A model generated the notes under the pieces. The model was not told where the DNA came from. It ran no database searches and saw only the letters and a program-made list of their open reading frames with translations. A stretch of 64,000 nt of DNA, taken from assembly GCA_904063045.1 (NCBI GenBank), contig CAJFCJ010000010.1, forward strand, positions 1,674,001 to 1,738,000. Reading direction: 5' to 3'. Both the position numbers and the translations under genes were made by a program. The DNA is from Dimorphilus gyrociliatus (lineage: Eukaryota; Animalia; Annelida). Shown in pieces: positions 9,223-14,783 of the stretch. Each line of letters starts with the position of its first letter. Position 1 is the stretch's first letter.

Positions 9223-12200
9223 ATGAGGTTTCTGTTACCTGTTTTCTTTGTGATTTTAGGTAAATCTACTTGTTTATTTTCTTATTGATTGAATTTTTAA
9301 TGATTTTCTGAACAAAATTCGTTGAACTATGCAGTTTTAACTGATGAGCAGTGTGTTGATAGAGCTTGCGTAATTTGTGAAAGAGGATATTACAAAAATG
9401 AGAGGTGTGTGAAATGTCCTGAGGATACCACAAACTTCTTTGTAGGTGCTACTTCCAGAGATGATTGTATACTTGCACCTCCACTACAAGAATATTTCAC
9501 TGTTAAAGGTACGATATAGTCAAAAATTAGGTATTAAGAATAGGTTAACGACATCTGACTTGGGGTTTATACTCGTCAATAATGACTAATGACTAAGTAG
9601 GCTTTACGTGTTGTTGAGTTTAAATAAACTATACGTATGTGTTTAGCCCCGAGTCTAATAAATATATTGTAATAACATTTCACAGATAAAAATTGCCCAC
9701 TTGGTACTGAAAATATATTGTCAAAATATTGTAAAGCCTGTTCATCTGTTTGTCCCGAATGTCCACCTAAATTTGGGACTTTAATAAGTGGTTCGAAAAA
9801 TAAAAATCAATGTTTGAAGTTGTCAGAAATTGACAAAATATTACTTCAACGGAAAGGTCACTATCTTATGGAATCTTTAATATTTATAAATGTAAAAAAT
9901 AAAATGTTGGAAATTTCTTTTCTTTAGACTATCAATGTCCAGATTTTACAGAAAGAGTAACAAACCCTGTTGAAGGGTGTAAACCTTGTTTGAACGGAAC
10001 AGTAATGTTTAACAAAAATCAAATGTTTTGCGAAAAGTGCAGACATCCGGATGGCATTTGTTCTGAAAGGGAATTTAAGGAAGAGGATTGCTTACCGGGA
10101 ACTCATTGGAACAAGAAATATTTACAATGCATACCATGCGGATATTCGTCTTTCAAGTAAAGAAATTACTTTATTTATATTAGGAAACAAATACGATACT
10201 TTTCCTATTTGAATGTATCATCTAGACTACAATATTTATATCTTTTAAAAAAGAGAGCTACAAAAATATTATAAAAGTAGAATTGTGTGATAGTTAATTG
10301 TTCAATACTTTTCTTTTTATATCCTTAATTATCATTAGCTTGGTAGACTTAGCGTGACGAGATAGTCTATTGAAGTACCATTCATTGCTATTTTTTTTCT
10401 TTTTTATGGATTTAAAGAAACGAAACTATGTCTAGCTGCATCGATTGTCCAGATAATAAATTTAACTACTTTAAAGGAGGAACAAATATCAGCGATTGTA
10501 TCCTGCCGAGTGTTAATGGAGGTCTTCCATTTTTCGTTCCAGGTGCGCATTTCGATTTTTATTCACTTTTTCCCTTTGTAGCGGCAATGTTTATTCTATT
10601 GTTTGTTTAAAAAACCTTGAATTTGTTTCCCTTTTATGACCCTTAAAAAAAGTGAATTAAACAGATGGCTTTATTTGAACAAAATTACTCATATGTTATA
10701 ATCGACGTTTGCTATGGAGTAAACAGAACAAAGAGCGCGTAAATTTTTATAATCAATGGTATGTAATTAATACGTCAAGGTTCACGACTAACGTAAAATA
10801 TGTAAAACGGCGAATAAATTATTAAAAATTTTGAAAAATCGACCGATTCATACGAGTTACCTATAAGTTCCCTTTATTTTTCTTTGCTTTAACTCGCTAA
10901 CCTTAATTTCCTTATGTTTATGTATACGGTTTATAACATTTTACAAACTTTCACCTGTGTCTATAGTGTTTTAAATGAATTTGCGGAAACGGTAATATTG
11001 ATTGCACAACATTTTCTAGATGATTGTCCTCCTGGTAGCGAGTATTCAGAGCTCAATGATGGCAATCGTCGTTGTATAGCTTGCGCTCAACACCACTATA
11101 GGGATGGAAAAACTAGATTATGCATTCAATGCCCAAAGGGTTTTGGAACTTTCCAACCGGGTTCCACGAAAATAGAGCACTGCAACAGGCCTTTGGCGTC
11201 AAATATGTCTTTACCCAAAACAGCAGAAGGCTGTCCAAAAGGATATGAAATTCAGTCAGATAAATGTGTGCCCTGTCCAAAGAATATGTTCAAAAGTAGT
11301 CAACTTGATGATTCAAATTGCCAACCTTGCCCGGAAAATACCATTGCCCTTTACGTTGGTTCTTCCTCTTGTCAGGAACTGATTCAAATTATAAGTTTCA
11401 GTCCTAACTCGACCAGAAAGGCAGATACAATTATTAATATCAAAATAAAAGGATCTTTTTCTGTCCAGTACATCTTAAATAGGATTACAATTGCAGAACA
11501 GCCATGTTTTACTAATGTTCTAAGGTAAATTACTTTTTTTAATTTATATATAATTGATAGGCTTGTTTAAGAATTGATTTCGTTTTGTTGATTTGCGAAA
11601 TATTCTTATAGGATATTCGAAAGAACAGAACTGATATGTACTGTAAGACATTCTCCTGAACCTGTAAGCGGACCGCTAAAGTTGATGTTGAATGATGAAA
11701 TTGTAGTTGAATCGAAAGACATATTTTCATTTTTAACAGTCCCAAAAATTGAATCAATTGATAGAGAAAAAACTTTCGAAAGGTAAATTCTCTCTCTCTC
11801 TCTCTCTCTTCTCTTTCTTCTTCTTCCTTGATCTAATCTAAACCTATTTTCCCCTTATCTACATAAATAACTTTTTCCTACTCAGCGGTGGTCTAATAGC
11901 CAGCGTTAAAGGATTCGATTTCAATTCAACTAATCCGTTAATGATTATTAGAATGGTTGAAGGAAACTTTACTACGGTTTGTTCTTAATATTAGATAAAC
12001 TTAGCTAGGTTGTTTTTTGTTAGTTTTCCTCTCGGTAAAAAGAAGCATTTTTGAATAATTTAAAATATTGAAAGGAGTTTTCCGAGGGAAAATTAATTAT
12101 AAAATGAATGTTTAATAAAAAATTGCTAATTTTATCTTTTCTCTTTCTTGTCTCAACGACAGAATTGTACTTTAGATTCTGACACACTTTTGGAATGTAT

Positions 12201-14783
12201 TTTACCTAGATTACCTAAGGGAAAGGGCAATATTGGTGTCTTATTCGACGAAGTCGATTACTATTCGGATTTCCAAAGTTTAACCGTATTAAATGACCCT
12301 CGGTTAAAGGTTTTTGAAAGAGATTTATATGAATTGGAAGCTTATAAAAAGTTTGCTATTTTTAATGGTACAAACTTAAATTCGGCAAAAATATCTGATT
12401 ATAAAATACAAATTGGTTCGGAAGAATGTAAAATAGGTTCTCTTTCATCTTCCAGTATAACGTGTAACGTGTTGGAGTTTGATGTAAATATTCAATATAA
12501 CGTTACAGTTAAATGCGCTGATTTCAGTTGGTCACTTGGCTTTTTGAAAAAAGTAGCAAAACCCGGTAAGTTTTTAAATAGGACACATGATATAAAAAAT
12601 TTAAAGACATTCCTAAGGGTCTTTTATGTATTTTTATACAAAAAGAGAAGTTTTTCTCTATATAAATAGCTTTCTCTTTTATTAGATGATTCTTCGGAAA
12701 ATGATGATAATGTTAACTTAATTATCATAATCTTATCAACGGTACTCGGCTTTCTATTCATCATCTTTATTATTATGGTGATATGTTTTTTGAGAAAAAA
12801 CTCGCAGTTTCGTAGGAAAAAGCAAACAAAACTTATTAAACGAGAATCGAAATGGAAATTACCATCGATTGGTACGAAACGAAAACGCAATTACGACGAC
12901 TACCTAATCGATTTCGACCAATTATCTATCCAATATGATATAGAACAAGGCTTCTTTGGTAAACTTAGCAAGGCTATTTTTTTTCCTCCACATCAGATCA
13001 AGATGGTTAATGTTCATATTAAATGCCTATACGGTGACAATGTAACACCTATAGATGTTTCGGAGTTTCTAGAAGAAGCCATGACTTTCAGCAATGTCTC
13101 AAATGATTATATATTGTCACCCATAGCTTTAACGTATGATTCCCTGAGGAAACCGTTTGTCCTGTTTCCTGCCGCAAACAATTTGAAGAACTTTTTAGTT
13201 AGATTCGGTTCAACATTAAGTCTAAATGATTTACTTTTCGTAGCAAACCAAGTTTTAGAAGGTTTGAATATTCTTTATCAGAAATACGGTATTCTTCACG
13301 GAGATATTGCTTGCCGTAATTGTGTGTTCGTATAATTATTTCTCAATAATTTCTTTTATGCTCTTTTATGAATTATTATAAAATAATTAGGATATCTCAT
13401 AACTTAACTACTCAAATTGCTGATAATTGCCTCTCTAAAGACCTCTATAGAAGTGACTACGGAATATTACCTGCCTGTGGAAATAGATCAGTACCAATCC
13501 GATGGATGGCACCCGAATTATTTGTAGATTATAAAATAACTCTTTGGTCTGAGTTGGTAAGTTGTTGTTTCATAGATTTATTCTAAAAACAGAGTAGAGA
13601 AATTTTTCGACATTCCTGTCGGCAATTTGAACTGAAAGAAAGTTCAACTAGTATACAAAAACTGGCGAGGGGCTAAATTTCATTTATGTATGACTGCGGC
13701 AGCTTTTCTCGGCTTACAGCCCTTTGGCACCGTATAAGGAAACTGCGTCTCTATCTGTCTTTTTCGCTCTCTCTGCGTAACTCATTCTCTTCTGATCTTT
13801 TTTTTTTTATTTGACCTTAAATTTTTTATGTTATTTTACTTGTTTTTTTTTCTCTTTTAGTCTAATCTATAAAAAGTTAATGTCTTCATTAATTTATGAT
13901 TAAATTGAGAAGATATTGACTCTGCTTTCAAAGAGCTCAAATGATACAAAAGTATTTCTAAGTATTAATTAAAGTTAATTGGAATTAATTTAAACTTTTT
14001 TCTTACAAAAAAAAAAAAAAACTAACTTTTGGAGTTTTGTAACGAATTTTAAGCATTAAACTTTGACCTTTTAATAGTAAAAAATAAGACGATTCATAAT
14101 TAGATAAATTTTCGCAAATTATTTACAGAAGAAATAGACAAAAGGTCGGTTTTGTTTACTTAGAATAAGGTCTATCAGTTTATATATATATAAATATATA
14201 CATATATATATATATATATAATATGTATTTAGCAAACTTAGCCTTGTTAATCCAACCTATTTAGCTCTTTTTGTGTGTATTTATTAATAGTAATTCATTT
14301 GGAGTACATGTTGCCATTCTTTAGATTTATGATGACTTTTTTTTTGCGAGAAATCAATAAATATAAAGTTATTCATTCTTACAAATAGTATTCGTCCGTT
14401 TGTAACTCGACTCAGATTGAATTTAGTCTGATAATATTGTATCTAAATTTGAGTCTGTTCTACTTTCGATCGTCGTATCCTTTTTACTTGTTATTCTTAT
14501 TATAATAAGTAATGACATTATTGTTCATTTTTTGCTTCTTTTCATTCTATAGTGGTCAGCTGCTGTTTTAATATGGGAAGTTTTAACAAATGGAGAAACT
14601 CCTTACTATAAGATTGATACACTAGACGTTCCTCATCACGTCCTTCAGGGTCAAGTGTTAGAACAGCCAGCTTTTTGCCCACGGGAAGTTTACGAATTAT
14701 TAAAGTGTTCATTTTCAAAAGAAATTACTGATAGACCAAGCTGGAAAAATCTACAAGCTACACTTACTAGATTCAGATATTAG
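9223..14783 (+). CDS. Receptor tyrosine (pseudo)kinase: signal peptide, several Cys-rich GCC2/GCC3 (ephrin-receptor-like) repeats, about 3 IPT/TIG domains, TM helix, RYK-like kinase domain; about 12 exons
   Basis: Signal peptide MRFLLPVFFVILVLT (9223). CPxGxY/CxxCP repeats in 9332-11390. IPT-like segments (SFSPNS..., GGLIASVKG, NGTNLN...IGSEECKI). TM IIIILSTVLGFLFIIFIIMVICFL near 12720-12790. Kinase motifs QGFFG, VHIK, FLEE, HGDIACRN, DNCLSKDLY, PIRWMAPE, WSAAVLIWE, DRPS; stop TAG at 14781-14783. Confidence 0.88.

What the first reader, a model, noticed from the sequence alone, without database searches (positions are those of the whole stretch)
9223..14783. RYK-type pseudokinase carried on a Cys-rich plus IPT ectodomain instead of WIF
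Seen: the spliced receptor has several CPxGxY/CxxCP repeats, about three IPT/TIG-like domains, one TM helix and a kinase domain. The DFG motif is replaced by DNC (13422-13430; DNCLSKDLY...PIRWMAPE), the Gly-loop lacks its first Gly (EQGFFG), and it also has KPFVLFP..NLKNFL and a terminal LTRF. Established: these are RYK/Derailed signatures (QEGTFG, KPMVILP..GNLKLFL, DNALSRDLF, LTEF). RYK normally binds Wnt through a small WIF domain, while juxtamembrane IPT arrays typify MET/RON/plexins. Inference: a domain-shuffled RYK-lineage pseudokinase receptor with an unknown, probably non-Wnt ligand. I know of no described family with this architecture.
Basis: partly seen in the sequence, partly recalled or inferred. 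Interest (0 to 1): 0.8.

Follow-up and report, generated by a model that had tools for sequence, protein, structure and literature searches.

The report
Annelid receptor with RYK-like dead-looking kinase
This small marine worm makes a cell-surface receptor whose outer part matches a little-known annelid receptor family, and whose inner kinase has changed at its active site in the same way as the Wnt co-receptor RYK, but it cannot be shown to descend from RYK.

Summary
Window 9223-14783 (+) is one 12-exon gene of the annelid Dimorphilus gyrociliatus, encoding 980 aa. It has a signal peptide, about six Ephrin_rec_like/TNFR-type Cys modules, three IPT/TIG domains, one TM helix and a tyrosine-kinase-like domain. 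That domain reads EQGFFG, HGD and DNC, the last exactly at 13422-13430.

RNA-derived contigs confirm 9 of 11 introns. One 2,035-nt contig joins the Cys repeats, IPTs, TM and kinase. An ortholog in an unnamed related species keeps every odd motif, with kinase dN/dS 0.09 against 0.27-0.32 for the ectodomain.

- The genome has a separate canonical WIF-RYK and a Sema-IPT MET.
- The kinase falls in the MET+RYK supergroup (100/95).
- It sits as sister to RYK (94/90; 97/92), but AU tests do not reject other placements.
- That grouping vanishes when 40 active-site and activation-loop columns are removed.
- RYK and MET-like profiles score it equally (202 vs 204 bits).
- The architecture is not unique. 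Owenia fusiformis CAH1793778 has Ephrin_rec_like + IPT + TM with an active MET-like kinase, and aligns colinearly with this protein.

Best reading: a fast-diverged member of that undescribed annelid receptor family that converged on a RYK-like pseudo-active site. This is a new variant of a known kind, of moderate interest.

The parts
9223..9259 (+). Exon 1: start codon and hydrophobic signal peptide (MRFLLPVFFVIL)
   Evidence: Model. The exon 1 to exon 2 joint is seen in an RNA-derived contig.
9335..10542 (+). Exons 2-5 (9335-9508, 9686-9856, 9928-10156, 10418-10542): about four Ephrin_rec_like/TNFR-type Cys-rich modules, aa 13-245
   Evidence: Pfam PF07699 scores 30.8 bits on exon 2, 21.1 on exon 5 and is weak on exon 3. 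Joints 3-4 and 4-5 are seen. Exon 2 to exon 3 is not bridged.
11020..11524 (+). Exon 6: two clear Ephrin_rec_like modules, then the start of IPT1
   Evidence: PF07699 gives two stretches at 51.8 bits. The region aligns colinearly with Owenia P0095 residues 167-300.
11382..12549 (+). Three IPT/TIG domains across exons 6-9: IPT1 11382-11726, IPT2 11742-12282, IPT3 12358-12549 (introns included)
   Evidence: Local IPT profile i-E values are 3.7e-5, 1.7e-5 and 6.3e-11. Pfam TIG scores 37.3 bits on exon 9.
12718..12792 (+). Transmembrane helix LIIIILSTVLGFLFIIFIIMVICFL (aa 647-671), followed by a basic stop-transfer stretch
   Evidence: Read from the sequence. Nearly identical in the relative L005: two changes in the 25 residues.
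12913..14774 (+). Tyrosine-kinase-like domain, aa 712-978, in exons 10 (12686-13325), 11 (13391-13556) and 12 (14553-14783)
   Evidence: PF07714 matches all three exons. Both introns are confirmed by RNA-derived contigs. dN/dS is 0.09.
12943..12960 (+). Gly-rich loop EQGFFG, with the first Gly of GxGxxG replaced by Glu
   Evidence: Conserved in the relative.
13021..13023 (+). Beta-3 lysine retained (VHIK)
13297..13305 (+). HGD in place of HRD. The catalytic Asp is kept and the Arg is lost.
   Evidence: The same HGDIAGRNCV occurs in Tachypleus RYK.
13422..13430 (+). DNC in place of DFG. The Mg-binding Asp is kept.
   Evidence: Conserved in the relative.

Best explanation
This is an expressed, selectively constrained single-pass receptor of the annelid Dimorphilus gyrociliatus. 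It has a signal peptide, about six Ephrin_rec_like Cys-rich modules, three IPT domains, a TM helix and a kinase-fold domain with an altered active site (ExGxxG, HGD, DNC).

It most likely descends from an annelid family of Ephrin_rec_like-IPT receptor tyrosine kinases. That family's Owenia member still has an active MET-like kinase. In the dinophilid line the kinase went through a burst of change and then came back under strong constraint. It ended with active-site states like those of RYK by convergence, not by inheriting RYK's kinase.

Inferred mechanism: the ectodomain binds an unknown, non-Wnt ligand. The cytoplasmic domain signals with little or no phosphotransfer, as a scaffold or allosteric partner of an active kinase, as the known receptor pseudokinases do.
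For: Shown:
- One spliced transcript.
- Domain content.
- An ortholog in a related species with all motifs kept. Its kinase dN/dS is 0.09, against 0.27-0.32 for the ectodomain.
- Colinear homology to Owenia CAH1793776/8 from the last two Cys modules through the IPTs and TM (blastp 6e-13, phmmer 1.7e-12), and through the kinase (1e-41). That protein has GKGQFG, HRD and DFG.
- The kinase lies in the MET+RYK supergroup (100/95).
- With the 40 motif columns removed it sits among MET-like kinases.
- Outside the activation segment it scores 9 bits better on the MET-like profile.
- It lacks the alphaD-alphaE insert of most RYKs.
- Loss of the HRD Arg and changes in the Gly-rich loop (the first Gly in RYK and STYK1) recur independently in PTK7, ROR1/2 and STYK1 (PMC13259870, Table 2).

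Inferred: the convergence, the non-catalytic signalling and the non-Wnt ligand.
Against: - All-column trees put the kinase next to RYK (94/90; 97/92).
- Several shared states are specific to RYK: DN[ACS], D[IV]AxRNCV, a single activation-loop Tyr, NR before P-[IV]-[RK]-W, and C-terminal LxxF with a very short tail.
- The ML tree never joins it to the Owenia-type clade without a constraint.
- Dimorphilus already has another kinase (C21) that groups with the Owenia type (99/94). This gene would therefore have to be a second, much faster-evolving copy.
- The 2.6-3.0 changes-per-site stem makes any placement unsafe.
- K, D and D are all retained, so some activity is possible.
Confidence: 0.55

Rival explanations
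1. True RYK-lineage kinase on a borrowed ectodomain. A duplicate of RYK's TM-kinase exons was joined to the Ephrin_rec_like-IPT exons of an Owenia-type receptor, or the lineage is an old sister of RYK that never had a WIF domain.
For: - Sister to RYK in all-column trees.
- RYK-specific motif states, including DNx, HGDIAxRNCV as in Tachypleus RYK, LxxF and a very short tail.
- The activation segment scores 6 bits better on the RYK profile.
- The exon phases would allow a join in intron 9.
Against: - The signal is confined to 40 motif columns.
- AU tests do not favour it significantly.
- Whole-domain profile scores are equal, while the left-out Dimorphilus RYK prefers the RYK profile by 76 bits.
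- It branches outside all RYKs, cnidarian ones included, and not beside the annelid or mollusc RYKs, as expected of a long-branch artefact and not of a recent shuffle.
- It has no RYK-type hydrophobic C-terminal end.
- In 1.84 billion representatives, nothing beyond the close dinophilid relative (P0001, 84% identical) lies near it.
Confidence: 0.25
2. It is still an active, atypical non-RD tyrosine kinase, not a pseudokinase.
For: - The beta-3 Lys, alphaC Glu, catalytic Asp and Asn, the Mg-binding Asp, APE and the tyrosine-kinase signature PIRWMAPE are all kept.
- Constraint on the domain is very strong (dN/dS 0.09, and 0.04 on the exon holding DNC and the activation loop).
Against: - The DFG Phe and Gly, the first G-loop Gly and the HRD Arg are all lost together. 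That is the same set as in RYK, whose ATP site is occluded (PMC13259870).
- The alphaF motif DVWSFG has become ELWSAA.
Confidence: 0.2

Closest known systems
Owenia fusiformis receptor protein-tyrosine kinase CAH1793778.1 / CAH1793776.1 (UniProt A0A8J1UNS8); automatic annotation only
   Same: - Same order of parts: Ephrin_rec_like modules, IPT array, TM, tyrosine-kinase fold.
- Colinear alignment over the ectodomain and the kinase.
- Same phylum.
   Different: - The Owenia kinase is canonical (GKGQFG, HRD, DFG, twin Tyr) and groups with MET-like kinases.
- The Owenia protein has two Cys modules. Its long isoform also carries an unrelated N-terminal segment of about 150 aa.
- The kinase domains are only 28% identical.
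RYK / Derailed (WIF-domain Wnt co-receptor pseudokinase; structure 6TUA)
   Same: - Active-site pattern: first G-loop Gly lost, HRD Arg lost, DFG changed to DNx.
- A single activation-loop Tyr.
- LxxF at the end of the kinase and a very short tail.
- Sister position in all-column trees.
   Different: - It has no WIF domain. The ectodomain is Cys-rich plus IPT.
- It lacks the hydrophobic C-terminal end.
- It lacks the alphaD-alphaE insert.
- It shows no overall profile preference for RYK.
- The genome has its own canonical RYK at contig 20.
MET / RON and the lophotrochozoan Met and Met-LP receptors (Junqueira Alves et al. 2019, PMC6374515)
   Same: - A juxtamembrane IPT array.
- The kinase is in the same supergroup.
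- The best PDB sequence matches of the N-lobe exon are EGFR and then MET.
   Different: - It has no Sema or PSI domain.
- The active site is degenerate.
- It has no C-terminal docking tail.
- Dimorphilus has a separate Sema-IPT MET at contig 4.

Membership tests
RYK | Extracellular WIF domain | tested here: not met
   No WIF match in any exon. The genome's only WIF hit is at contig 20, upstream of a separate RYK kinase.
RYK | Kinase domain groups with RYK kinases | tested here: inconclusive
   - Sister to RYK at 94/90 and 97/92.
- Alternatives are not rejected (p-AU 0.549 and 0.188).
- The grouping is lost without the motif columns.
- Profile scores are 202.4 vs 204.2 bits.
RYK | Pseudo-active site QxGxxG / HKD / DNA (PMC13259870, Table 2) | tested here: met
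   ExGxxG, HGD and DNC. The pattern is the same but the residues are not identical. HGD also occurs in Tachypleus RYK.
RYK | Short tail ending in a hydrophobic residue (..YI, ..FV, ..FI in the RYKs fetched here) | tested here: not met
   The protein ends LTRFRY directly after the kinase fold.
MET/RON | Sema and PSI domains at the N-terminus | tested here: not met
   Pfam finds neither. The Sema-bearing MET is at contig 4.
MET/RON | IPT array next to the membrane | tested here: met
   Three IPT units at aa 367-630.
MET/RON | Canonical kinase with twin activation-loop tyrosines | tested here: not met
   DNC, and DYGI instead of DYY.
Annelid Ephrin_rec_like-IPT receptor kinases (Owenia type; not named in any paper found) | Ephrin_rec_like modules, then IPT array, TM and tyrosine-kinase fold, colinear with the Owenia protein | tested here: met
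   - phmmer 1.7e-12 over aa 242-523.
- blastp 6e-13 over aa 267-670.
- Kinase 1e-41.
- Pfam on both proteins.
Annelid Ephrin_rec_like-IPT receptor kinases (Owenia type; not named in any paper found) | Kinase groups with the Owenia / Paralvinella / Dimorphilus-C21 clade | tested here: inconclusive
   It is not in the free ML tree. It is not rejected when constrained.
Pseudokinase (classical sequence definition) | Loss of at least one of the beta-3 Lys, the catalytic Asp or the DFG Asp | tested here: not met
   All three are kept (VHIK, HGD, DNC). RYK keeps them too and is still classed as a pseudokinase on structural grounds. ATP binding cannot be tested with these tools.

The most novel reading that the evidence does not exclude
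Dimorphilus may have split one ancestral Owenia-type receptor kinase into two complementary genes.
- This gene keeps the ligand-binding Ephrin_rec_like-IPT ectodomain but has a dead-looking kinase.
- The contig-21 gene keeps an active Owenia-type kinase and a TM helix, but almost no ectodomain.

The two could work as an obligate heteromeric receptor, with binding on one chain and catalysis on the other, as ErbB3 works with ErbB2.
Probability: 0.12. Interest if true: 0.7.

Novelty: new variant of a known kind. Interest (0 to 1): 0.42.

Why it matters
- It adds an invertebrate receptor pseudokinase candidate that reached RYK's unusual active-site pattern (DNx, no HRD Arg, no first G-loop Gly) on a different receptor scaffold. 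If this is convergence, the pattern is a preferred way of silencing this kinase fold, not a quirk of RYK.
- The domain is under stronger constraint than the ligand-binding part, so it is doing something.
- It exposes an annelid Ephrin_rec_like-IPT receptor kinase family that a survey seeded on Sema domains could not see (PMC6374515).
- It is also a caution. Motif signatures and a well-supported tree node (97/92) pointed to RYK, yet the signal came from 40 columns.

Tried and rejected
- Intron positions as a marker. Both kinase introns of this gene (after RNCV, and before WS) are shared by the Paralvinella Owenia-type kinase gene (L039) and by Tachypleus RYK (L040). They are old and do not discriminate.
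- Owenia genomic DNA, wanted for synteny and intron phases, was withheld. The Dreissena RYK gene was too long and Acropora RYK was not on record.
- A word-based homolog search with the Owenia protein found only Owenia isoforms. That is a limit of the method and does not show the family is rare.
- The ESM Atlas search of the Owenia ectodomain gave only scores below 0.8, which are leads and not evidence.
- No Ephrin_rec_like or IPT exons were found within 10 kb upstream of the Paralvinella kinase, or upstream of the Dimorphilus C21 kinase.
- PDB sequence search alone could not assign a family. EGFR and MET scored 1e-7 to 1e-6 and RYK 2e-5 for the N-lobe exon. MuSK, InsR, ROR2 and RYK all matched the activation-loop exon.
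- Paper searches found no description of this architecture or of this gene.
- It was joined only inside local scripts for alignments, trees and profiles.
- Complex prediction was not used, because binding to the C21 kinase is only a speculative reading.
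Full report
**What is there**

The window is AT-rich eukaryotic DNA. I did not verify the name independently. The 77.9-Mb assembly is close to the 73.8 Mb given in the abstract of the genome paper.

On the + strand, 9223-14783 holds a 12-exon gene with GT-AG at all 11 introns and one open 980-aa frame. The exons are 9223-9259, 9335-9508, 9686-9856, 9928-10156, 10418-10542, 11020-11524, 11612-11782, 11886-11976, 12163-12565, 12686-13325, 13391-13556 and 14553-14783.

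Pfam was run exon by exon:
- Ephrin_rec_like matches exon 2 and exon 6 (two copies) above the family cut-off, and exons 3 and 5 below it.
- TIG matches exon 9.
- PK_Tyr_Ser-Thr matches exons 10-12.

Two IPT units are split by introns, so I built a local IPT profile from 30 TIG segments of MET-like hits. It finds three units at aa 367-452, 458-541 and 567-630. The TM helix is aa 647-671.

- EQGFFG at 12943-12960.
- VHIK, with the Lys at 13021-13023.
- HGD at 13297-13305.
- DNC at 13422-13430.
- PIRWMAPE, KPFVLFP..NLKNFL and the terminal LTRFRY.

**One transcript**

The only public run that holds the stretch (X1, kind not recorded) gave contigs that skip 9 of the 11 predicted introns, all at GT..AG. 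It is therefore RNA-derived.
- One 2,035-nt contig runs from the last 28 nt of exon 5 through exons 6-11 into exon 12. It links Cys-rich modules, IPTs, TM and kinase.
- Other contigs join exons 1-2 and 3-4-5.
- Exon 2 to exon 3 is not bridged.
- The intron 7 joint fell in a masked CT repeat, but the contig's length accounts for exons 7 and 8.
- One low-depth contig (10513-10978) lies mostly in intron 5 and is unspliced.

**Conservation**

The exhaustive profile search of 1.84 billion representatives found only 94 proteins at E<=0.001. Only one was close: P0001, 84% identical. P0001 lies on Logan contigs from an unnamed related species.

The 13.5-kb contig L005 carries the whole syntenic gene with open exons. 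EQGFFG, HGD and DNC are unchanged. Nei-Gojobori estimates:

| Region | dN/dS |
|---|---|
| TM to kinase | 0.09 |
| Exon 11 (holds DNC) | 0.04 |
| Cys-rich and IPT parts | 0.27-0.32 |

The kinase fold is now the most constrained part of the protein. The long stem in the trees (2.6-3.0 changes per site) therefore reflects an older burst of change.

**What else the genome has**

- A canonical RYK on contig 20. A WIF exon, a TM helix and a single-exon kinase with MEGTFG, HKD and DPA lie within 2 kb.
- A Sema-PSI-IPT MET on contig 4 with an active kinase.
- A third relative on contig 21. It has an active MET-like kinase and a TM helix but almost no ectodomain, and unrelated genes begin about 0.6 kb upstream.

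**The architecture is not unique**

Among the 94 hits, the ectodomain of this protein matched one best: P0041. P0041 is Owenia fusiformis CAH1793778.1, named only 'receptor protein-tyrosine kinase'. Pfam gives it Ephrin_rec_like x2, TIG and PK_Tyr_Ser-Thr. Its kinase has GKGQFG, HRD, DFG and twin tyrosines.

The alignment is colinear with its long isoform P0095:
- aa 267-670 against 173-633, E 6e-13.
- aa 683-978 against 701-1005, E 1e-41.

A kinase-only Paralvinella model and the Dimorphilus contig-21 kinase group with the Owenia kinase (99/94).

I found no paper describing this architecture. The survey that reported Met and Met-LP receptors in Lophotrochozoa searched with Sema domains, so it could not find Sema-less relatives (PMC6374515).

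**RYK or MET-like?**

Trees used IQ-TREE with LG+C20+F+G4 (PMSF). The rows were RYKs identified by their WIF domains and source names, MET-like kinases identified by Sema/IPT, and 11 further Dimorphilus tyrosine kinases as outgroups (Eph, ROR, PTK7-like, FGFR-like, ACK and others).

Support for RYK:
- The kinase lies in a MET+RYK supergroup (100/95), sister to RYK at 94/90 with 76 rows and at 97/92 with 52 rows.
- RYK-like character states are real: first G-loop Gly lost, HGD (also in Tachypleus RYK), D-I-A-x-R-N-C-V, DNx, a single activation-loop Tyr, NR before P-[IV]-[RK]-W, and LxxF at the C-terminus.

Against robustness:
- Holding the kinase with the Owenia-type clade gave a likelihood 2.06 higher than the free search had found (p-AU 0.549).
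- With the contig-21 kinase added, the constrained tree was 5.19 lower (p-AU 0.188).
- I removed the G-loop, HxD and DFG-to-activation-loop blocks, which took the kept columns from 292 to 252. The kinase then sits among MET-like kinases (64/79). RYK is then 2.5 log-likelihood units worse (p-AU 0.359).
- Family profiles score it 202.4 bits (RYK) and 204.2 bits (MET-like). Left-out true members prefer their own family by 76-125 bits.
- Only the 34-aa activation segment prefers RYK, by 6 bits. The rest prefers MET-like by 9 bits.
- It lacks the alphaD-alphaE insert of most RYKs and RYK's hydrophobic C-terminal end.
- Intron positions do not help, because RYK and the Owenia-type kinase share them.

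**Reading**

The kinase alone cannot be assigned within the MET/RYK supergroup. The ectodomain, the order of domains and the phylum point to the Owenia-type family. The RYK signal sits in exactly the columns that change when catalysis is given up.

The review table of human receptor pseudokinases shows the HRD-to-HKD change recurring in unrelated families (PTK7, ROR1/2, RYK, STYK1). First-Gly substitutions recur in RYK and STYK1 (PMC13259870).

My estimates:
- About 0.55 for descent from the Owenia-type family with convergence on RYK's pattern.
- About 0.25 for a real RYK-derived kinase.

Whether the domain is inactive is a separate question and is inferred only. K, D and D are all kept, as in RYK, so the classical sequence definition of a pseudokinase is not met.

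**Limits**

- The joined protein was never sent to a search, family, fold or complex tool. It was joined only in local scripts.
- The 5' end rests on one contig, and exon 2 to exon 3 is unbridged.

Noticed in passing
G000:C21:455800-457010 (L053:3270-5009, minus strand): An active MET-like kinase of the Owenia type (GKGQFG, HRD, DFG, twin Tyr) with a TM helix but almost no ectodomain. Only a short remnant resembling the last IPT strand is left. An unrelated + strand gene starts about 0.6 kb upstream, and GPCR genes lie beyond it.
   Followed up: partly
G000:C20:1233446-1235340 (L001, L003, L023): The canonical Dimorphilus RYK has a WIF exon, a TM helix and a single-exon kinase. It reads DPA where other RYKs read DNA or DNS. 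It has nearly lost the alphaD-alphaE insert seen in other RYKs.
   Followed up: partly
G000:C4:343700-348200 (L004, L008, L017): A Sema-PSI-IPT MET ortholog with an intronless active kinase domain. This agrees with the report of Met receptors in Lophotrochozoa (PMC6374515).
   Followed up: partly
window 10513-10978: A low-depth RNA-derived contig (depth 7.8) covers the end of exon 5 and most of intron 5 unspliced. A loose end at 10614 runs on into unlike sequence. It could be retained intron or pre-mRNA.
   Followed up: no
window 11786-11830 and 14185-14225: A (CT)n microsatellite at the start of intron 7 and an (AT)n run in the 996-nt intron 11. The read tool masked both.
   Followed up: no
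P0002 (2,911 aa) and P0003 (1,305 aa), ENA metagenome proteins: These were the second and third best hits of the kinase exon, but only because each carries 5 to 10 tandem kinase domains in one protein. Their origin was not examined.
   Followed up: no
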